IMG/VR virus record: IMGVR_UViG_3300024239_000014 | Location: 185,641-249,640 of that record | Length of the DNA: 64,000 nucleotides | Direction: 5' to 3' (one strand) | The notes under the pieces: generated by a model | The model's database searches: none | The model's input: only the letters and a program-made list of their open reading frames with translations | What the model was told of the DNA's origin: nothing | Made by a program: the position numbers and the translations under genes | In this document: piece after piece, positions 29,055 through 63,892 of the stretch | How positions within the stretch are numbered: the stretch's first letter is position 1 | How the letters are laid out: each line of letters begins with the position of its first letter

Positions 29055-31046
29055 ATGCCCAATCTAGCCAAGAAAACCATCGTCGCACGAGAATGTCGTC
29101 ACGTCACGCACGTTACCGACCAGACACCTGATAGCGATAAAGACCTACTCGTCGCTAAGGAAGTTGTCCATTATTCCGATGGTACCAGCGAACCCAGATT
29201 ACAGTTCTTTGAAAACTATCCGATTGACTTCTATGTCACCAAGACTGGGTTTCGAAATCACACCGACAAGAAACTGTTTGAGCACATTGAGAAGCTTGAT
29301 CAGGTGAAGTGTACTCAACGTACGCTGGGGCAAACCATCGCCCGTGTACTACGCACCACCTATCAGCCCAATCTTCGGGTAATGGGACGCAGTCCATTCC
29401 TGTACGGTTCTGACGTTCCCTCTACAGTGCGATTGAAACACCGATACAAGAAGAAGTGGACTGACAAACAGACGCTCAATACGGTAGCCGTCTGTGACTT
29501 AGAAACCGATGTGGTTTGGGGGACTAGCGAGATTCTATCAGGCACCTTGTCGTTCAAAAACAAAGTACTCCTGGTGGTCAATCGAAAGTTCGTCGATACA
29601 CTACCGCTCTTTCAGAAAACGTTGCTTGAGAAGTTTGAAAAACATCTCGGAGAAGTAAAACGTCAGCGTGGCATTAATCTTCAGGTGGAGATTGCTGAAA
29701 CGCCTGGTCAGGTGGTCACCACACTCCTGCGTTATGCACATGAATGGAAACCAGATTTTCTAGCCTTTTGGAATATGGACTACGATATTCCAAAAATGAT
29801 TGATGCGTTGGAATACGAGCGCTTTGATCCAGCGTACTACTTTTCTGATCCGTCAGTCCCGGCACATTATCGGTACTTCCAGTACAAGCAAGGTCAGAAG
29901 GCGCTGACGACGGCAAGTGGTAAGCATAAGCCTTACGATCCGGCAGAACAGTGGCATACCGTGATCTGTCCGGCCAGTTTCTATGTCATCGATGCCATGT
30001 GTGCTTATTACCGGATTCGTATGGCCGGTGGTAAAGACTCCAGCTATTCATTGAATGCCGTACTGACTAAAGAACTCGGCATCCGTAAGCTGGACTTTAA
30101 AGAAGCCGAAGGGTTGGATGGTTTGGCATGGCACACGTTCATGCAACAGTACTACAAGATCGAGTATCTGATCTACAACATCTTTGACTGTATTTCAGTG
30201 GAGATGTTGGACGAGAAGACTAAAGATCTGTCGAGCACCATTTCGGTGCTAAATGGTTGCAGTGACTACCACACCTTCTCCAGTCAACCACGACGGACCT
30301 GTAATGACTTGCACTTCTTTGCATTGGAGAACGGGCACGTTATTGCGGCTACGTCTGATAAGATGGAGACCGAGCTCGATAAGCTAACCGTAGACGTCAG
30401 CGGGTGGATCGTCACCTTACCTGCGCACATGATTGTTCAGCACGGTGTGGCATGCATCGAAGAATTTCCGGATTTAAACACATGCATCTACCTCCATGTA
30501 GCGGATTAACAACATAGTCCCTTCCAGGAGTAATCTTGGTCGAATAACCCATCTAATTGCAAGAAAGCCGTAAAGGCCTCGGCAGGCCAGGTAACTTGCA
30601 GCGAAGCTTCCTTCTGGGAAGAACGTTCAACGACTATCGAAAGCCAGTGATATCTCACTGAAGCGAGTAGAGTAGGGGACAGCGTCCCCGAAATGGTGGG
30701 CCACCTCTAATACAGGTGGATGACATAGTCTGCTCTTATGCGAATAGCATAAGCGGGTACCTGAGCGTACCGAGTGTATTTAGCGCATACACTGGACAAT
30801 AGGATCGACGTAGCAGCCGCATACCCCAACGGAGAGGACATCAACAACATCAGCCATGAGACCACATTCCGAGAACTGTCTCAAATTGCTGGCGTAACGG
30901 ATGAAGCTCGTCGGCGTTGTGGTATTAACTTCACAGGCGGACCTAACAACGCTGTGGAGATCTGTCGAGAAATTTACAAATTGCCCGATCTCCATACCCT
31001 CTATTTAGACTTTGAAGACAGCCGCACTATTAACCAAGCGGCATAA
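29055..31046 (+). CDS. family B DNA polymerase subunit (exonuclease + motif A; phiKZ gp82-like), spliced: exon 1 29055-30506, exon 2 30804-31046, 564 aa
   Basis: ExoI CDLETD, ExoII FWNMDYD, ExoIII YNIFDC. Splicing joins VAD|IDVAAAYPN (motif A). Confidence 0.85.
30507..30803 (+). mobile_element. group I self-splicing intron, 297 nt, no ORF
   Basis: 5' exon ends in U (GGAU pairs with IGS GUCC) and intron ends in G. P AATTGCAAGAAA, Q TTGCAGCGAAGC, R GTTCAACGACTATC, S ATGACATAGTCT; P3 CCCATC/GGTGGG; starts with an in-frame TAA. Confidence 0.9.
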
Positions 31047-31100
31047 AGCGTAGCCCTCTTGTACTGCACTGTAAATGCAGTACAAGAGGGTGCTATGACG
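31038..31100. terminator. bidirectional terminator
   Basis: 15-bp stem CCCTCTTGTACTGCA/TGCAGTACAAGAGGG; tails TATGACG (+) and TTTATGCCGC (-). Confidence 0.75.
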
Positions 31101-56378: not shown

Positions 56379-58344
56379 TACTCCCCCTTCGCTGGGCTCG
56401 TTTGGAGCCAGTGGTTAAGTGTTGCCAGGATTGGTGCTGGCAGTGCTACATCTCGGCTAACCGAGTACGGTTTATTCAAGTCCATCAACGAGAGGTGAGA
56501 CGCCAGTGGTTCAAGACGTTTGTTCATCTCCCAATCCAGACTCAAAATACCGTTGAGCTGGTCACCGTCAAAGTCGGCCGTACTTTCATGCAGTTCGCTA
56601 CGCTGCACAGTTCTCGTTTGCAGTAAACCAGAGGATGAAATCCACCACAAATGAACTTCCCCAATTCTCATTGGGATACAAGACTATATCTTCACCATAC
56701 CGAGTACATGACTCGGGTTAGGGCTCCCCATTTCGATTACCATTTGGCTGGATAATCTACTCTACTCGCTTCTTCACTCAGACCTCGCGACCTGAGCTAT
56801 GCTTTCGATAGTCGTTGAACGTTCACCACGCTGTGTTATGCCACTTCGGCCAAAGCAGAGGTGCTTCGCTGCTGATTGTCCCTTGGTTCGATCGTATCTG
56901 TTTTTAGAGCATATCGCGTCGAGACTTTCGTCTTGGTGTCGCATGCCTCACGGCAGTACGTCCCGCTGTAGCCAGATACGGAAAAGGAGTTCCCAGCAAT
57001 TAGAGGAGTTACATCCTAAAGTTTCCCTTAGGCGGAACATATTTCATTCGGGCCTTTGAGGACTAGCACCGACAAGCACATAGCGTTGATGTCAGGATCT
57101 TTGATGATAGCCGTGACAAAAAGCCGTTGTGCACTTAACCGTTGCAATGACGGGTTACGCTGAAGAACCACCACCGGACCCCGTCCAGGCGCTTCAGCAA
57201 TCAACTGATCCAAAAGCTCCGACATCTTGTCGTTGTATTTGATCATCGAATCGGTGATGAACTGCGTGGCTTGTTTGGGCGTGTAACCTAACTTCGCCAA
57301 CTTGTTGTGCAAGTGCATCTTAAACAAACTGATGGCCAACGACCACGGCAAATGGCAATCGTCGTACCGATGCGGTCTCGATATCGATGTAATCACAGCA
57401 CGGAATGAGAATGCCGGCCGCGAACCAAACACATGGCGGCGGAACCAACCACCCTTTGAGCTCAGGTTGTGCTTGTACTGTTGAAAGTAGAACGACGCTA
57501 ACTGAATCGACGCTTTAGCGGCGCGCGCTTCTTTGAGCTGCAATGAAGGTTGCGTATCAATACCACTGTACAAACCTTGGATGGTTCGCATGGCATCGAG
57601 GGCATCCCGCATTCGGAGATCGGCACGAGGTGCACCGATATCCAACGACTCAATGATGAACGTGATCTTGCACGGAATCGGAAGGTGCTGCGGAAAGAAC
57701 TTGTGGCGATTCTGTGCTATCCACTGTTTGGTCCTGGCCAACTCGGCTTTCTTCAGGCTGGTAAAGCCATTCACCGATAGCAGGATTTCCATAATGGCGT
57801 CGAAGTTAGCAATGAAGTAATTGAGCCCTCGCTCAACACCTGCATCGCTCAGTAACCGCAACCATTCCGACCGAGGAGACGGCGGACGGTAATACGGATC
57901 AACCAGCCAAGTCAAGATATCGTTATTGTCCTTCTTGAACAACTTCGATAAGATGTTCCACACCGTTGGGTTGATCAGACCCAACACACCGTCGGGCGCT
58001 TTGATCCACACCTTGGATTCAATGGGCTTTTCAGCCGGTACGATTGCTTCAGTCCCACAATCCTGACAAATGATGCCAGGTACGGTGGTGTGTCCACACT
58101 CGCACGTAGGTGTCGCTTCCAAGCTCTCGGTGTCGTAACGCGTCATCAACAGATCATTCAGTTCCGCACGAGACGAAACATCATCGGTAGACCACTCATT
58201 AGCAATCACCGGGCGGCTACTTAGAGAATGGAAGTACTCGTCGATGTCTTCCACATCCAAATAAACACCCCGGAGGGCTTGTTGAAGCTCTTCATTTTCA
58301 TCCACGGGTTGGATTTCTTGGCCTGTTTCTGTTTCAGTCTCCAC
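56378..58344 (-). CDS. nvRNAP beta' N-terminal catalytic subunit (phiKZ gp55-56.1-like), spliced: exon 1 58344-57046, exon 2 56578-56378, 499 aa
   Basis: Zn ribbon CECG...CQDC, KGGWFRRHVFGSR, RAVITS, LQRNPSL. Splicing restores GPN|ADFDGDQLN. Confidence 0.9.
56579..57045 (-). mobile_element. group I self-splicing intron, 467 nt, no ORF
   Basis: 5' exon ends in U (GAAU/GUUC P1) and intron ends in G. P AATTGCTGGGAA, Q AATCAGCAGCGAAGC, R GTTCAACGACTATC, S AAGATATAGTCT; P3 CTCCTC/GGGGAG. Confidence 0.92.
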
Positions 58345-58419: not shown

Positions 58420-60267
58420 TTACCAGCGAGATGAACCGGCGTAGCCGACGTTGGTCTGGGTGCCGAACTGCTGGGTCTGATGCAGCTGCTGGCCGATACC
58501 GCTGTTGCCGAGGCCCAGCAGACCGAGGTTCTGACGAACCTGCGGCACGCCGTAGAAGCTACCGCGAGAATCGTTCAGACGGATGCCAGCACCCACTTCC
58601 TTCATGGCAGCAGCCAGTGCGGACAGGAAGTCCGGGGTGAAGGTCAGGTGGTAGCCATACCCGGCCAGCTCGTAACCAGGCAGCAGAGCACCGAGCAGGC
58701 GAGCACGTTCAGCCAGGCAAACCGATGCAGGACGACCGGCACGGTTTTCGATGGTTTCGATGTAGCTCGCACGTGCGTGCGGGTCCTGCTGAGTCAGGGC
58801 CAGGATCGCCAGGTGGTCGATATCGCGGATATCCCGCTTCTCGCCGTTGGCGTCGGTGTAGGTACCGAGCAGGATCTGACGACGCAGGGTAACGACTTGC
58901 GGACCCTGTTTCCAGTGGTTGCTGAACGCACCGCCGGTCAGGTTGTTCGCAGCATTCAGGATGGCGGTAGTCGCGGCCTGATTGCCCATCGCCGAGCTGA
59001 TGAACTCGTTGTAGATCGCACTGTACGGGCCAGTGGGATCGACCTGCAACGAAATGATCAGGTTACGGTGGAAAAAGTCGTTGAAGAACGCGCCCATTTC
59101 CTCAGGGGACATGGCGCCGCCTTTGAGACCCTTCACCGGAGCGAACGGAGCGCCCGGCTGTGGCTGATACTCGGTACCCAGGATGCCGACGTCGCGCTGG
59201 TTGATGTCGTTCTTGCTGCCCTTGCCACCCATACCACGCGGCTGGTAAGCCCAGGACCACAGAGCGTTCTCTTCCAGCAGACCAGCAGACACCAGTGCCA
59301 TCAGCACGCGGTCGAGATGCATGTCAACCGACAGCGTGGAGATGTCGGTGATGACCGCTTCGGCCATGTACGCCTTGGTGGAACCCGGCTGCACGATGCC
59401 GTTGACGACCTGCTGACCCACCGGGCCAACGAAGTTGGTGTCAACGTAACCATGCACACGGAACAGGTCACAACCGGCGTTGGCGATGGTACCCGGCTTG
59501 GTGTTTGCCGGACTGGCGCCAACCGAGATCACGACATCAGCACGCACCGGACGACCAACAGCATCAGCGGTCTGCACCAGCGGGAACTGAACAGTACCGT
59601 TCAGCTGTGCCGGTTCTTCCGGAGTACGCAGGGCGATGGCCAGGTTCAGCGGCATGGCTTCGTCGGCCTTGGCGGTGATGTTGGCAAACAGCACGTGGGC
59701 CAGGCGGCGCATGGCGGTTTCGTCGCTGGTATCGATATCGCTCGGCACCACGAGGCAGCCGGAATCGATGACTTCGGCTACGTTGGCGATGCTGTCTTTC
59801 AGGCGACGCTCAACTGCTGACCAGAAGTCGTTGTTCCAGCAGTCGCCGGTGGTGACAGGCAGTTCGTACTGCTGGCCCATGTACTGCTCGACACGCGGTT
59901 GGATGCGGCCGGTCGGTGCCTGGGTCATGATGACGCTGACAAACAGTTTCTTGTCAGCACGGAACTTGCACACGGCAAGCGCGTTGGCCGGGAGGCGGTT
60001 GGCGGCTGCATCCAGCGGCATGGCATGCCAGCCAGCGCCAGCTTCTTTCAGGAAGGTGGACAAACCTTCATGCAGGCGGCGCAGGGTCTCGGCGTCGGCC
60101 ACCGGACGAACCGGAGTGTTACCCGTGCCAGCCAGGGCGAAAATCGAACCCACTGCGCGAGTAGCCACGTCGGCAGCTACCGACTGGGCGGGCGCACCGG
60201 TATCGACCGGAGCACGAGTCGGGGTCTGTGCAGCAGCGGCAGGTTTGGTTTTATCGTTCAAGGCCAT
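58420..60267 (-). CDS. chmA: chimallin, phage nucleus shell protein (phiKZ gp54-like)
   Basis: 615 aa with flexible A/P N-terminus and G/Q C-terminus; GYVDTNF...AVITD...LMAL...W..AYQP pattern; lies between the gp52-like gene and nvRNAP beta'; early promoter; strong codon bias. Confidence 0.85.
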   Translation of the reverse strand: MALNDKTKPAAAAQTPTRAPVDTGAPAQSVAADVATRAVGSIFALAGTGNTPVRPVADAETLRRLHEGLSTFLKEAGAGWHAMPLDAAANRLPANALAVCKFRADKKLFVSVIMTQAPTGRIQPRVEQYMGQQYELPVTTGDCWNNDFWSAVERRLKDSIANVAEVIDSGCLVVPSDIDTSDETAMRRLAHVLFANITAKADEAMPLNLAIALRTPEEPAQLNGTVQFPLVQTADAVGRPVRADVVISVGASPANTKPGTIANAGCDLFRVHGYVDTNFVGPVGQQVVNGIVQPGSTKAYMAEAVITDISTLSVDMHLDRVLMALVSAGLLEENALWSWAYQPRGMGGKGSKNDINQRDVGILGTEYQPQPGAPFAPVKGLKGGAMSPEEMGAFFNDFFHRNLIISLQVDPTGPYSAIYNEFISSAMGNQAATTAILNAANNLTGGAFSNHWKQGPQVVTLRRQILLGTYTDANGEKRDIRDIDHLAILALTQQDPHARASYIETIENRAGRPASVCLAERARLLGALLPGYELAGYGYHLTFTPDFLSALAAAMKEVGAGIRLNDSRGSFYGVPQVRQNLGLLGLGNSGIGQQLHQTQQFGTQTNVGYAGSSRW

Positions 60268-61741: not shown

Positions 61742-63892
61742 TCAGTACAGATCGCTCAGCAGTCGCGTATTATGCGTATCACGCATGAAGATGTTCAAAG
61801 GTTCCAGGATCAGATAAAACGGCGATGTAATGTCGTACACGATGTCACGTACGGCAGCCACATCCGATATCTCTTTAGGAATACCTTTTGTTACCGCAAT
61901 TGGAGCTGGGACGTTAAATGTTCCCACCGCTTTCCGACCATTGCGTTTTAAGTATTCCTCCATGCGCGTAGCCAAGGCTTTATCTTCCATGGATGCAAAC
62001 CACGCTTTCAATAGAGACGGTTTATCCAAATCCACATTGATCTTGATCGCACCGTACGGCGGCGGTGGGACCGATCCATACTTCGGAGCAAAGACTTCTT
62101 CCCAAAGCTCATACGAGGTGTAAGGGTTAGTACCTCCTTCCTTGTATGTTTCCTTAGGTTTTACCTGAAGACCTTTGAAGTACTTAAAGCCGCCATTGCG
62201 GATATCGGCAATAATCTGCCGCTCCACATCTGCCATCTCTTTCAAGATAGGGAGAATGGCAACCTTACCAGTTTCGGCAACAGACTTCAAAATACGGTCG
62301 ATGAATCCGCGAGCCTTCTCGGCGACTTCTGGAGGTGTCTTTGAACTACGCAGCGACACGCCTTTGATTTCGAGTTTAGGTTTAGGCCACACGTTACCCT
62401 CCTGCTCGGTGATGATGCTGTAATAGTGCTTTGCCAATGGCGTAAGGGCAAACACCGGAAACGCATACTCGTTCTTCATGGCCAACTGATGAATCTTGTC
62501 GCGATCGACACCCATGTTGCCGGACATGGTAGCAAGAAGATGTACGACTGTCTGCGATGCGATATACACCATGGCGTTACGGACAGCATTGGTCAACCGA
62601 TCGACTCGATTATAACCAGCGTACCATTTACACCAATTCTGAACCGTAAAAATCGTGGAGTCCGTATCGGAAACCACACCTGCACGTCGAGTGGCCGAAG
62701 TAAACGACGCAACTGATAATGGCATATTGCGGGTGGTCAGTAGCCCTCGAATAATCGGACGATACTTATCCAGCACCGCATACGTCTTCAATGCAGTAGA
62801 CGCAATCCGACCACGGATTTCCAGCGGTTCGTCCTTGAGGTCGACGGCTTTACCGTCAGCACCCACTGAACGCATATGCGCTGTCAACGAACCAATAAAC
62901 GCCTTCATGTCGCTATCAAGCGACTTCATAACAGCGTCGGGTTCCGGATGAACATCATCAGATACTTCGATCATGTCGCCAATCAATTGGCGCATCAGCT
63001 CCTGGTTATATTTACCCAGGTGATACAAATCGCCAATGTACATGAAAGCAGCGCGTTCAACTGGCGTGCAGCCATTGAGCAACTGCAAGATCTGCTGGTA
63101 GGCTTCGCCCGACTGGGAAATCCAATAGAAGTCGCTGCTGTAACGAACGCAATCTAAACATTCGTCTGCTGTCGGCAAATACAGATTGAACATATCCACG
63201 GCTTCTTGGAAAGCCGTGAAGTCAGTCAATGCGATGATGGAAACAATGTTTTCAATCACCACATTGTGGTTGTAGTAATGGCGGTTACCCCACAACAACT
63301 TTTCGTTATTGGCGTTAGCGTAAGCCGCTGCCGTCCGACAGGTGGACGTTAAGGTGCTGTGTGCTGAACGAAGCCAGAGGACTGTGAACTTGGAGTTATG
63401 GGCGCCAGAAAGTGAGTTGTTGTTGATCTTGAACGATGTCTGTTCTGAGTTCTTGATACCCTCTAAGACCACGTCACCTGCATGCTTGGCAGCGTACATG
63501 GCGTGCTTGGCTGCGTTGCGTTTAGCAACGTTACCGCCAATATACATACCGAGCAACGAACGCTTTTCGCGAGCATTGAGATAGATCGCCAAAGAAGGAG
63601 ATGCGATGCGTCGTTTTTCAACGATATCATCCAGCATCTCATCAAAGGTGATGACTTCTTTAACGCGATTACCTTCGGTGTGGCGAGTCAGCACCAGTGC
63701 TGCTGGATCGGTTTTGGCAAATTTACCACCAAAGGCTGTAACTCGTTTAACGTGCTCAAATGCCACGGCATAAGACACTTTAGACATCCGCTCGATATAC
63801 AGAGCCGCATTGTGGCAATACTGTTCGTAAAATCGATAATCTCGTTTATACGAAGCAGGCGGGTTAACAAAATGGTTAGTTCTTGCACTCAT
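61742..63892 (-). CDS. family B DNA polymerase subunit (motifs B and C; phiKZ gp50-like)
   Basis: Motif B KINNNSLSG; motif C VSDTDST; KNEY and EIKGVSLRSS. Confidence 0.85.
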   Translation of the reverse strand: MSARTNHFVNPPASYKRDYRFYEQYCHNAALYIERMSKVSYAVAFEHVKRVTAFGGKFAKTDPAALVLTRHTEGNRVKEVITFDEMLDDIVEKRRIASPSLAIYLNAREKRSLLGMYIGGNVAKRNAAKHAMYAAKHAGDVVLEGIKNSEQTSFKINNNSLSGAHNSKFTVLWLRSAHSTLTSTCRTAAAYANANNEKLLWGNRHYYNHNVVIENIVSIIALTDFTAFQEAVDMFNLYLPTADECLDCVRYSSDFYWISQSGEAYQQILQLLNGCTPVERAAFMYIGDLYHLGKYNQELMRQLIGDMIEVSDDVHPEPDAVMKSLDSDMKAFIGSLTAHMRSVGADGKAVDLKDEPLEIRGRIASTALKTYAVLDKYRPIIRGLLTTRNMPLSVASFTSATRRAGVVSDTDSTIFTVQNWCKWYAGYNRVDRLTNAVRNAMVYIASQTVVHLLATMSGNMGVDRDKIHQLAMKNEYAFPVFALTPLAKHYYSIITEQEGNVWPKPKLEIKGVSLRSSKTPPEVAEKARGFIDRILKSVAETGKVAILPILKEMADVERQIIADIRNGGFKYFKGLQVKPKETYKEGGTNPYTSYELWEEVFAPKYGSVPPPPYGAIKINVDLDKPSLLKAWFASMEDKALATRMEEYLKRNGRKAVGTFNVPAPIAVTKGIPKEISDVAAVRDIVYDITSPFYLILEPLNIFMRDTHNTRLLSDLY

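What the first reader, a model, noticed from the sequence alone, without database searches (positions are those of the whole stretch)
30507..30803. ORF-less group I intron inside DNA polymerase motif A
Seen: a compact 297-nt intron with full P/Q/R/S core splits VAD|IDVAAAYPN and begins with an in-frame TAA. The track's two ORFs (484 and 90 aa) are one 564-aa subunit. Established: phage group I introns favour conserved catalytic motifs. This insertion site in the gp82-like subunit is not one I recall being described. Replication would depend on splicing in a phage whose transcription and translation are spatially separated (inference).
Basis: partly seen in the sequence, partly recalled or inferred. 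Interest (0 to 1): 0.65.

Follow-up and report, generated by a model that had tools for sequence, protein, structure and literature searches.

The report
Self-splicing intron in phage DNA polymerase
A 297-base self-splicing RNA element (a group I intron with no gene of its own) interrupts the DNA polymerase gene of an uncultured phiKZ-like jumbo phage two codons before a catalytic residue. It is real, but it is one more member of an intron family that already sits at this spot in phage Goslar and in many environmental relatives.

Summary
Window 30507-30803 (+) is a group I intron: Rfam RF00028 scores 57.1 bits (cut-off 50, E 7e-12), a U·G wobble marks the 5' splice site, and the intron ends in G. 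Ten related introns support the helices by covariation. Exon 1 (29055-30506, 484 codons) and exon 2 (30804-31046, 80 codons) abut exactly on the DNA polymerase profile and on uninterrupted homologues (phiKZ gp82 D560|L561). A 97.5%-identical natural allele lacks exactly these 297 bases.

The site lies two codons before the motif A catalytic Asp (phiKZ D562). The host gene is the N-terminal subunit (DNAP-N) of the split family B polymerase of chimalliviruses. The window also encodes the partner subunit (DNAP-C) and a homologue of chimallin, the phage-nucleus shell protein.

The site is not new. Goslar gp068 carries an HNH-containing intron at the same junction, noted in an October 2026 preprint. 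About 20% of the 120 closest environmental homologues appear interrupted in or next to motif A. PhiPA3 has an unannotated intron two codons downstream.

Splicing itself has not been shown. Verdict: a new member of a known kind, of moderate interest.

The parts
29055..30506 (+). Exon 1 of the DNAP-N gene (484 codons). It encodes the N-terminal and 3'-5' exonuclease domains of a split family B DNA polymerase and ends ...H-V-A-D.
   Evidence: ORF. phrog_3011 profile 3-494, E 9e-174. 40.5% identity to phiKZ gp82 and 48.5% to Burkholderia phage FLC9. Exo I/II/III residues are invariant in alignment A1. The fold matches RB69/T4 gp43 at E 1e-13.
30507..30803 (+). ORF-less group I intron, 297 nt. It begins with an in-frame TAA and ends with the terminal G (30803).
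   Evidence: RF00028 at 57.1 bits, E 7e-12. The indel against the intron-less allele is exact. Homologous introns sit at the same site in L006, L010, L012, L016, L015, L017 and Goslar.
30503..30520 (+). P1 hairpin: GGAUUA (30503-30508) pairs with the internal guide UAGUCC (30515-30520). The 5' splice site follows U30506, which forms the U·G wobble with G30517. The loop is only 6 nt; relatives carry their HNH ORF at this position.
   Evidence: Sequence. ORF positions in L015, L017 and Goslar relative to the core.
30548..30730 (+). Catalytic core. P3 30548-53/30695-700; P4 30558-63/30595-600; P5 30567-69/30590-92; P5a 30575-78/30585-88; P6 30607-11/30617-21; P7 30632-36/30726-30 (pseudoknot with P3); P7.1 30637-30666; P7.2 30675-30689; P8 30701-06/30714-19.
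   Evidence: Helices located. Covariation over 10 introns: 76.7% of cells paired against 37-47% when partners are slid, 52 of 79 pairs changed on both sides, 0 of 500 shuffles as good. P6 and P7 are 100% paired.
30735..30792 (+). Peripheral 3' hairpins: P9 (30735-41/30747-53), P9.1 (30756-60/30767-71) and P9.2 (30774-79/30787-92).
   Evidence: All six P9.2 pairs show changes on both sides.
30804..31046 (+). Exon 2 (80 codons plus stop). It starts I-D-V-A-A-A-Y-P-N, so it carries the motif A catalytic Asp (second residue) and the Y-P of motif A, followed by the start of the palm-insertion region.
   Evidence: phrog_3011 profile 495-571. It abuts FLC9 residue 504 and phiKZ residue 561. D484, D486, Y491 and P492 are invariant. 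Alignment to RB69 405-430. phiKZ D562 is named as motif A.
31054..31090 (.). 15-bp perfect hairpin between the convergent DNAP-N gene and the 364-aa ORF on the minus strand. It is probably a two-way transcription terminator.
   Evidence: Read directly from the sequence; no scan was run on it.
61745..63886 (-). DNAP-C gene, the partner subunit (rest of the palm with motif C, plus fingers and thumb). Context only, not part of the intron.
   Evidence: tblastn with phiKZ gp050 gives 36% identity over residues 5-731 of 731, E 3e-144.
58420..60267 (-). Chimallin (phage-nucleus shell protein, phiKZ gp054) homologue. Context for the point about separated transcription and translation.
   Evidence: tblastn with phiKZ gp054 gives 24.6% identity over 582 of 626 residues, E 8e-26. 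ORF.

Best explanation
Window 30507-30803 is a functional ORF-less group I intron, IA2-like because it has P7.1 and P7.2. It lies in the gene for DNAP-N, the N-terminal subunit of the split family B DNA polymerase of a phiKZ-like (chimallivirus) jumbo phage.

Proposed mechanism. The pre-mRNA folds into the P1-P9.2 structure. An exogenous guanosine bound in P7 attacks after U30506, the U·G pair of P1. The freed exon 1 then attacks after the terminal G30803. The product joins GCGGAU to AUCGAC and gives an mRNA for a 564-aa protein reading ...HVAD-IDVAAAYPN....

Unspliced RNA stops at the intron's first codon (TAA). That yields a 484-aa protein with the exonuclease domain but without the motif A catalytic Asp, so polymerase activity, and with it phage replication, depends on splicing.

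The intron belongs to a family that occupies this site, and two sites 2 and 7 codons downstream, in many relatives. In those relatives an HNH/NUMOD1 homing endonuclease gene often sits in the P1 loop. The window's copy has lost that gene and cannot home by itself. It is polymorphic in nature.

Shown here: the structure, the junction, occupied and empty alleles, and the family relationships. Inferred: the catalysis itself, the dependence of replication on splicing, and how the intron was gained or lost.
For: Rfam match above the curated cut-off.

Hallmarks seen directly in the sequence: a U·G wobble at the 5' splice site, a terminal G, and a P7/P3 pseudoknot.

Covariation across 10 homologous introns: 52 of 79 pairs changed on both sides, 76.7% of cells paired against 37-47% in slid controls, 0 of 500 shuffles as good.

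The exons abut exactly on the PHROG profile (494|495) and on uninterrupted FLC9 and phiKZ proteins.

Natural intron-less alleles at 97.5% amino-acid identity (P0131; L008, L009) and 83% (P0002; L007) lack exactly the 297 nt.

The same site is occupied in hosts of 46-97% identity, with or without HNH ORFs. In Goslar my junction equals the published one.

The window and L010 introns are 87% identical while their exons are 68-72% identical.

D486 is the motif A catalytic Asp.

The intron holds no endonuclease-like ORF, and the 250-kb record has no HNH_3 match.
Against: No RNA evidence. The four runs laid (three labelled RNA, two of those probably DNA; contigs only) show no joint across 30507-30803, only contigs that cross the intron-exon borders.

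P10 pairing with exon 2 is at best 2 bp.

The Rfam score is only 7 bits above the cut-off, and Rfam's own P5 alignment has non-canonical pairs.

The phage is uncultured and the record is about 90% complete, so a homing endonuclease supplied from elsewhere in the genome cannot be fully excluded.
Confidence: 0.9

Rival explanations
1. The element is a dead intron relic. It no longer splices, so this DNAP-N gene is a pseudogene or the record is a defective phage.
For: There is no homing endonuclease gene, the Rfam score is modest, splicing has not been observed, and the phage is known only from metagenomes.
Against: The core helices are kept through compensatory changes even between the 92%-identical window and L006 copies. 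Both exons stay open and conserved, with invariant catalytic residues. The same intron-bearing allele turns up in several samples, and the partner subunit is intact. DNAP-N is part of the replicative polymerase.
Confidence: 0.05
2. The gene is truly split at this point. The 484-aa protein and a separately translated peptide of about 80-90 aa assemble without RNA splicing, just as DNAP-N and DNAP-C do.
For: Chimallivirus polymerases are already split into subunits. A GTG-started 90-aa ORF exists at 30774..31046.
Against: The spacer is a complete group I ribozyme with splice-site hallmarks at exactly the codon boundary. The GTG start lies inside the P9.2 hairpin. 287 of 290 cultured-phage homologues and most environmental ones are continuous here. 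Such a split would put the two invariant Asp residues, D484 and D486, on different chains.
Confidence: 0.03
3. The intron splices but is not autonomous. Efficient splicing in vivo needs a phage or host RNA chaperone, or needs export to the cytoplasm and translation of exon 1, so that splicing acts as a timing or regulatory step for polymerase production.
For: The window encodes a chimallin homologue, so transcription probably takes place without ribosomes. T4 introns are reported to need translation of the pre-mRNA for efficient splicing in vivo (Sandegren and Sjoberg 2007; I saw only its title, in the reference list read). The in-frame TAA at the first intron codon would keep ribosomes out of the core.
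Against: Nothing here tests it. Compact IA2-type phage introns generally self-splice in vitro (general knowledge). This is a refinement of the main explanation rather than a contradiction of it.
Confidence: 0.2

Closest known systems
Group I intron in Escherichia phage Goslar gp068 (DNAP-N) carrying the homing endonuclease gene gp069
   Same: Same host gene family and the same insertion point: exon 1 ends ...GCGGAT followed by TAAC..., and exon 2 starts L-D-I-S-S-S-Y-P-N. The RNA core is homologous. The published CDS, 79690-81186 + 82949-83203 of NC_048170.1, equals my junction.
   Different: The Goslar intron is 1762 nt and holds a NUMOD1/HNH_3 ORF in the P1 loop. The window's intron is 297 nt with a 6-nt P1 loop and no ORF. 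The host proteins are only 34% identical.
PhiPA3 gp210 intron in the virion RNA polymerase beta-subunit gene (Birkholz et al. 2024, PMC11620839)
   Same: A putative group I intron in a chimallivirus polymerase gene, inserted right after conserved catalytic-centre Asp residues. This genome's third intron sits at that same H-D-D| site.
   Different: It lies in a different gene from the finding and encodes an active nicking HNH endonuclease that acts as a weapon against phiKZ. The window's intron has no endonuclease.
Group I introns in DNA polymerase genes of SPO1/SP82/phi-e, Bastille, LUZ24 and Pf-WMP3
   Same: They are phage group I introns that interrupt the replicative DNA polymerase gene in conserved regions. 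The SPO1, Bastille and Pf-WMP3 introns encode nicking HNH endonucleases, and the LUZ24 intron interrupts the phage DNA polymerase gene (titles and text seen).
   Different: From my own knowledge, not tested here: their host genes are mostly family A polymerases and the insertion sites are unrelated. The introns are not shown to be homologous to this one beyond the common core.
T4 td, nrdB and sunY (nrdD) introns, subgroup IA2
   Same: Small phage group I introns with P7.1 and P7.2 between P7 and P3', and an early in-frame stop in the intron (own knowledge). The window has P7.1 at 30637-30666 and P7.2 at 30675-30689.
   Different: The host genes differ. The T4 introns carry, or once carried, GIY-YIG or HNH ORFs in other loops (P6, P9.1). 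The window's relatives carry theirs in the P1 loop.

Membership tests
Group I intron (Rfam RF00028) | Covariance-model score above the curated gathering threshold over the whole model | tested here: met
   57.1 bits against 50, model positions 1-253, E 7.4e-12. The L006 copy scores 66.3 bits.
Group I intron (Rfam RF00028) | Conserved core helices P3-P8, including the P3/P7 pseudoknot, supported by covariation | tested here: met
   52 of 79 pairs changed on both sides; P3 88%, P4 92-95%, P6 100%, P7 100% and P8 75% of cells paired; slid controls 37-47%.
Group I intron (Rfam RF00028) | A U at the end of the 5' exon forming a U·G wobble in P1, and a terminal G at the 3' end of the intron | tested here: met
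   U30506·G30517 within GGAUUA/UAGUCC, and G30803.
Group I intron (Rfam RF00028) | Precise removal restores a continuous, conserved reading frame | tested here: met
   Profile positions 494|495, FLC9 503|504 and phiKZ 560|561, and an exact 297-nt indel against L008/L009.
Group I intron (Rfam RF00028) | Guanosine-dependent self-splicing, or spliced RNA in vivo | tested here: inconclusive
   The contigs of four wastewater runs show no joint and cannot show RNA processing.
Subgroup IA2 (T4 td-like) | Extra hairpins P7.1 and P7.2 between P7 and P3' | tested here: met
   P7.1 lies at 30637-30666 and P7.2 at 30675-30689. Five of six P7.2 pairs are changed on both sides. The P7.1 distal stem is present only in the window and L006. 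No formal subgroup classifier was run.
Mobile (homing) group I intron | Intron-encoded homing endonuclease gene | tested here: not met
   The only + strand ORF of 40 aa or more that overlaps 30507-30803 is the 90-aa frame that runs on into exon 2. The P1 loop is 6 nt. The genome record has no HNH_3 match.
Mobile (homing) group I intron | Occupied and empty alleles among close relatives, and endonuclease-bearing versions at the same site | tested here: met
   L006 is occupied, while L008 and L009 are empty at 97.5% amino-acid identity. HNH ORF-bearing introns sit at the same site in L011, L015, L017 and Goslar.
Chimallivirus DNAP-N (phiKZ gp82-like subunit of a split family B DNA polymerase) | Full-length homology to gp82, with invariant Exo I/II/III residues and motif A (D-x-D-x4-Y-P) | tested here: met
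   40.5% identity to PHIKZ082. D148/E150, N240/D244, Y374/D378 and D484/D486/Y491/P492 are invariant. Collinear matches to RB69 gp43 and a fold match.
Chimallivirus DNAP-N (phiKZ gp82-like subunit of a split family B DNA polymerase) | A separate DNAP-C partner gene and a chimallin gene in the same genome | tested here: met
   gp050 homologue at window 61745-63886 (-) and gp054 homologue at 58555-60267 (-).

The most novel reading that the evidence does not exclude
One intron lineage, recognisable by the same P1 (exon ...GAU followed by UA...UAGUCC), may be targeting Asp codons at the catalytic centres of all three polymerase genes of nucleus-forming phages. The sites are DNAP-N motif A (three sites within 7 codons), RNAP beta H-D-D| and RNAP beta-prime N|ADFDGD. 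On this reading the lineage jumps between genes and is still moving in natural populations, using HNH endonucleases supplied by co-infecting relatives. Its ORF-less copies would have to fold and splice without co-transcriptional translation inside the phage nucleus. That would make them natural reporters of where RNA processing happens in these phages, and possibly a switch between an exonuclease-only protein and a full polymerase.
Probability: 0.2. Interest if true: 0.65.

Novelty: new member of a known kind. Interest (0 to 1): 0.4.

Why it matters
Gene callers split this essential gene into a 484-aa 'polymerase' and a stray 90-aa ORF. The same mis-annotation is present in the RefSeq records of the model phages Goslar and PhiPA3, and in roughly a fifth of the closest environmental homologues. 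Anyone who expresses, models or builds trees from chimallivirus DNAP-N from such calls loses the motif A catalytic Asp.

Biologically, the finding adds a population-level picture. The motif A codons of DNAP-N are an intron hot spot with occupied, empty, ORF-bearing and ORF-less alleles. All three introns of this genome sit at catalytic acidic motifs of polymerases. In phages that separate transcription from translation, these introns pose a testable question: where, and with what help, do group I introns splice? None of this changes what is known about how group I introns work.

Tried and rejected
Searches that gave nothing useful:
- Megablast of the gene against 50,697 phage records found no match.
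- A viral-contig scan with exon 1 found no relatives.
- Pfam on the window's own exons gave nothing meaningful.
- phmmer of exon 1 against PDB sequences gave only noise. A profile of 40 natural homologues was needed to reach RB69 gp43, and even then only at E 0.04.
- The AlphaFold2 model of the intron-less allele P0131 is confident for residues 1-430 but below pLDDT 50 at 480-510. The fold search therefore confirms only the N-terminal and exonuclease part. The motif A assignment rests on the sequence alignment and on the published phiKZ structure.
- Laying four wastewater runs on 29900-31100 gave no spliced joint. All four are contigs, two of the three 'RNA' runs are probably DNA, and intron-less DNA alleles exist, so the result says nothing either way.
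- The sharp depth peak at 30597-30637 is the conserved P6/P7 core shared by many unrelated introns, not expression.
- An HNH_3 search of the genome found nothing.

Readings considered and rejected:
- Intein: the insert is RNA-structured, starts with a stop codon and has no protein homology.
- Translational bypass of 297 nt: the insert is a complete ribozyme.
- Two independent polypeptides: see the rival explanations.

I never built or submitted an exon 1 + exon 2 protein. The exons were searched separately by reference, and natural uninterrupted alleles (P0131, P0002 and others) stood in for the spliced product.

Full report
**What is there.** The window is the last 64 kb of a 249,640-bp IMG/VR virus record that is about 90% complete. 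At 29055-30509 the ORF list shows a 484-aa frame ending ...LHVAD followed by TAA. At 30774-31046 it shows a 90-aa frame that contains ...IDVAAAYPNGE.

Rfam's group I model (RF00028) matches 30497-30753 on the + strand over its full length. The score is 57.1 bits against a gathering score of 50, with E 7.4e-12 for the whole window.

The splice-site hallmarks can be read straight from the sequence:
- GGAUUA (30503-30508) pairs with UAGUCC (30515-20) to form P1.
- U30506 forms a U·G wobble with G30517.
- The intron starts UAA at 30507.
- Its last base, 30803, is G.

**The junction is exact.**
- Searched separately, exon 1 matches positions 3-494 of the PHROG DNA polymerase profile phrog_3011, and exon 2 matches positions 495-571.
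- Against uninterrupted homologues, exon 1 ends at FLC9 residue 503 and phiKZ gp82 residue 560. Exon 2 begins at 504 and 561. The homologues read HVAD|LDVSASYPN and HIAD|LDIVSTYPN.
- The protein database holds a natural 564-aa allele, P0131 (contigs L008 and L009). It is 97.5% identical to exon 1 and 100% identical to exon 2, and its DNA runs ...GCGGAT ATTGAC... without interruption.
- A sister contig, L006, carries the 297-nt intron at the same point.
- L006 and L008 differ at 36 of 1452 exon 1 bases and 4 of 243 exon 2 bases, plus the clean 297-nt indel.
- The bases at the borders allow no other placement of the indel.
- A second empty allele at 83% identity is L007.
- I did not build or submit a joined exon 1 + exon 2 model. 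The natural empty alleles served that purpose.

**The RNA structure is real.** I located helices P1, P2, P3, P4, P5, P5a, P6, P7, P7.1, P7.2, P8, P9, P9.1 and P9.2. I then counted the pairs on an alignment of ten introns from this gene family: the window, L006, L010, L012, L016, PhiPA3, and the cores of L015, L017, L013 and Goslar.

| Measure | Result |
|---|---|
| Cells forming a standard pair | 76.7% |
| Same, with 3' partners slid 1-3 columns | 37-47% |
| Pairs changed on both sides | 52 of 79 |
| Shuffles reaching the observed values | 0 of 500 |
| P6 and P7 | 100% paired, with compensatory changes |

Even the window and L006, whose introns are 92% identical, differ by compensatory pairs in P5a and P8. 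The presence of P7.1 and P7.2 makes the intron IA2-like. This rests on my knowledge of the T4 introns; no classifier was run.

**The host gene and motif A.** The protein is the homologue of PHIKZ082, at 40.5% identity. The nearest cultured relatives are Burkholderia phage FLC9 and Xanthomonas jumbo phages.

Two October 2026 preprints describe the chimallivirus replicative polymerase. It is a family B enzyme split into DNAP-N (phiKZ gp82, Goslar gp68) and DNAP-C (phiKZ gp50), plus a clamp-like RNase H protein. D562 of gp82 is the motif A catalytic Asp, and D562A is the polymerase-dead mutant used in their assays.

phiKZ D562 is the second residue after my junction (D560|L561). In an alignment of 40 natural uninterrupted homologues, D484, D486, Y491 and P492 are invariant, as are the Exo I, II and III residues.

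The profile of that alignment hits RB69 gp43 first. The match is weak (E 0.04) but comes in three collinear stretches, and it places D486 on RB69 D411 within SFDLTSLYPS. An AlphaFold2 model of P0131 matches RB69/T4 gp43, Pol II and Pol epsilon at E about 1e-13 over the N-terminal and exonuclease part. It is unreliable around motif A when folded without DNAP-C.

The intron therefore sits two codons upstream of the catalytic Asp, between two invariant aspartates.

The window also encodes the partner subunit and the nuclear shell protein:
- DNAP-C at 61745-63886 (-), 36% identical to gp050 over its full length.
- A chimallin homologue at 58555-60267 (-), E 8e-26.

**How it most likely works.**
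- Shown: a complete, covarying ribozyme with canonical splice-site features, placed so that its removal recreates an invariant catalytic motif.
- Inferred: guanosine-initiated self-splicing joins GCGGAU to AUCGAC.
- Inferred: unspliced RNA terminates at the first intron codon and gives an exonuclease-domain protein without motif A, so replication depends on splicing.
- Untested: whether folding happens in the nucleus without ribosomes or after export.

The only RNA-level attempt was uninformative. Contigs of four wastewater runs, laid on 29900-31100, showed no joint.

**It belongs to a family that uses this site as a hot spot.** The called proteins of the 120 best homologues of exon 1 include:

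| Where the called protein ends | Proteins |
|---|---|
| At, or a few junk codons after, the same H-V-A/G-D | about 19 |
| Two codons later (HVADLD) | 3 |
| After DLDVxAS | 2 |

DNA behind a sample of these proteins confirms introns:

| Locus | Host identity to window | Insert | Notes |
|---|---|---|---|
| L010 | 66% | 317 nt, same site | ORF-less; RF00028 75.5 bits |
| L016 | 46% | 441 nt, same site | RF00028 58.7 bits |
| L012 | 49% | 435 nt, same site | no Rfam hit at the cut-off, but it aligns with the family |
| L015 | 47% | about 1.7 kb, same site | 443-aa HNH_3 ORF |
| L017 | 51% | about 1.7 kb, same site | 418-aa ORF with faint HNH_3 and NUMOD1 matches |
| L011 | 52% | incomplete | HNH ORF follows exon 1; the locus ends before exon 2 |
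| L013 | 47% | two codons downstream | 467-aa ORF |

In the ORF-bearing copies the ORF sits in the P1 loop. In the window that loop is 6 nt.

Among 290 cultured-phage records with the region, 287 are continuous. Two exceptions were examined:
- **Goslar** is split at the same point. Its intron (L018 2242-4003) holds gp069, a NUMOD1/HNH_3 protein, and my junction equals the one given in the preprint's Methods.
- **PhiPA3** has a 344-nt ORF-less intron immediately after the catalytic Asp (L019 2762-3105). RefSeq does not annotate it, and the gp085 CDS stops at the intron's TAA.

**Evolutionary hints.**
- The window and L010 introns are 87% identical although their exons are only 68-72% identical. 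This fits lateral spread, or stronger constraint on the intron. I cannot separate the two.
- Differences between the window and both L006 and L008 pile up in the 200 nt just upstream of the junction: 37 of 92 and 39 of 81 exon 1 differences (binomial p 4e-10 and 1e-13). Nine of the 12 amino-acid differences fall at residues 444-477.
- That pattern looks like a recombination or co-conversion tract ending at the intron. However, the segment is also a low-confidence, probably variable loop.
- The record has no HNH_3 gene, so this copy cannot move on its own.

**Comparison with what is known, and novelty.** Group I introns in conserved motifs of phage DNA polymerase genes are classical (SPO1, Bastille, LUZ24). 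Chimallivirus introns are known from PhiPA3 gp210. This exact site is recorded for Goslar.

The finding is therefore a new, ORF-less member of a known kind, not a new insertion site. This work adds:
- the occupied/empty allele pair;
- the three-site hot spot around motif A;
- the unannotated PhiPA3 intron;
- the observation that all three introns of this genome sit at catalytic acidic motifs of polymerases.

I found no paper that surveys DNAP-N introns. The library does not hold every journal.

**Verdict.** Confidence in the mechanism is 0.9, pending a splicing assay. Interest is moderate, 0.4.

Noticed in passing
window 56579-57045 (- strand): A second ORF-less group I intron (467 nt; RF00028 69.6 bits at 56659-57058). 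It sits in the RNA polymerase beta-prime-like gene that is homologous to phiKZ gp055. Exon 1 ends ...LKGPN (AAU, last base 57046), the intron's last base 56579 is G, and exon 2 starts ADFDGDQ at 56578. It therefore splits the N|ADFDGD catalytic motif.
   Followed up: partly
G000:C1:37989-38330 (- strand) = L001 1453-1794: A third ORF-less group I intron (342 nt; RF00028 78.5 bits) in an RNA polymerase beta-like gene. Exon 1 ends ...IVHDD (GAU) and exon 2 starts MKRALFASIQQ. From the paper's description, this is the H-D-D| site where PhiPA3 carries its gp210 intron; I did not align the PhiPA3 gene. Its 5' end (GAT|TATTTACATAGTCC) resembles that of the DNAP-N intron.
   Followed up: partly
L019 2762-3105 (Pseudomonas phage PhiPA3, NC_028999.1, gp085 region): An unannotated 344-nt ORF-less group I-type intron in the PhiPA3 DNAP-N gene, directly after the motif A catalytic Asp (HVADLD|IVSTYPNV). 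The RefSeq CDS stops at the intron's TAA, and exon 2 (from L019 3106) is not annotated.
   Followed up: partly
L014 4475-4525 and the identical stretch in L022 (from 2975); JGI peat/soil-type metagenome contigs: In a DNAP-N homologue (P0055, seen on 7 contigs) a 51-nt AT-rich insert sits after the first base of the motif A Tyr codon. It has three in-frame stops and a 10-bp hairpin. Exact removal restores SAS-Y-PNG. It begins after a T and ends in G, like a group I intron, but is far too small to be a ribozyme. In L021 the same position is followed by a normal-looking group I intron 5' half. Relatives at 58% identity (L023, L024) are uninterrupted. It is unexplained: possibly an intron remnant that needs splicing in trans or bypass, or a dead gene.
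   Followed up: partly
window 30307-30506: Nucleotide differences between the window and its closest relatives (both L006 with the intron and L008/L009 without it) are concentrated in the 200 nt just upstream of the intron. The tally is 37 of 92 and 39 of 81 exon 1 differences, p 4e-10 and 1e-13. L006 and L008 are almost identical to each other there. The pattern looks like a recombination or co-conversion tract ending at the insertion site.
   Followed up: partly
genome intron 3 (L001 1453-1794) compared with DNAP-N introns of L012, L016 and PhiPA3: The RNAP-beta intron of this genome is more similar to DNAP-N introns of other phages (62-65%) than the window's own DNAP-N intron is to them (50-53%). 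This hints that the intron family moves between polymerase genes. Global-alignment identities in this range are noisy.
   Followed up: partly
L014 4688-5014 and 5067-5714 (-): The same L014 gene has a strong RF00028 hit (82.8 bits) overlapping its 3' end. An I-TevI DNA-binding-domain ORF follows on the opposite strand. I did not work out what this intron interrupts.
   Followed up: no
window 30597-30637: In wastewater runs, contig depth peaks 10- to 100-fold on this 40-nt stretch (the P6/P7 core...GAACGTTCAACGACTA), with many loose ends on both sides. Many different group I introns in those communities share this core sequence.
   Followed up: no
L013 7364-7467 and beyond: Near the DNAP-N gene of contig SRR23924977_2546, an 861-aa gene carries a LAGLIDADG_3 domain. 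It may be an intein or another homing element in a neighbouring gene.
   Followed up: no
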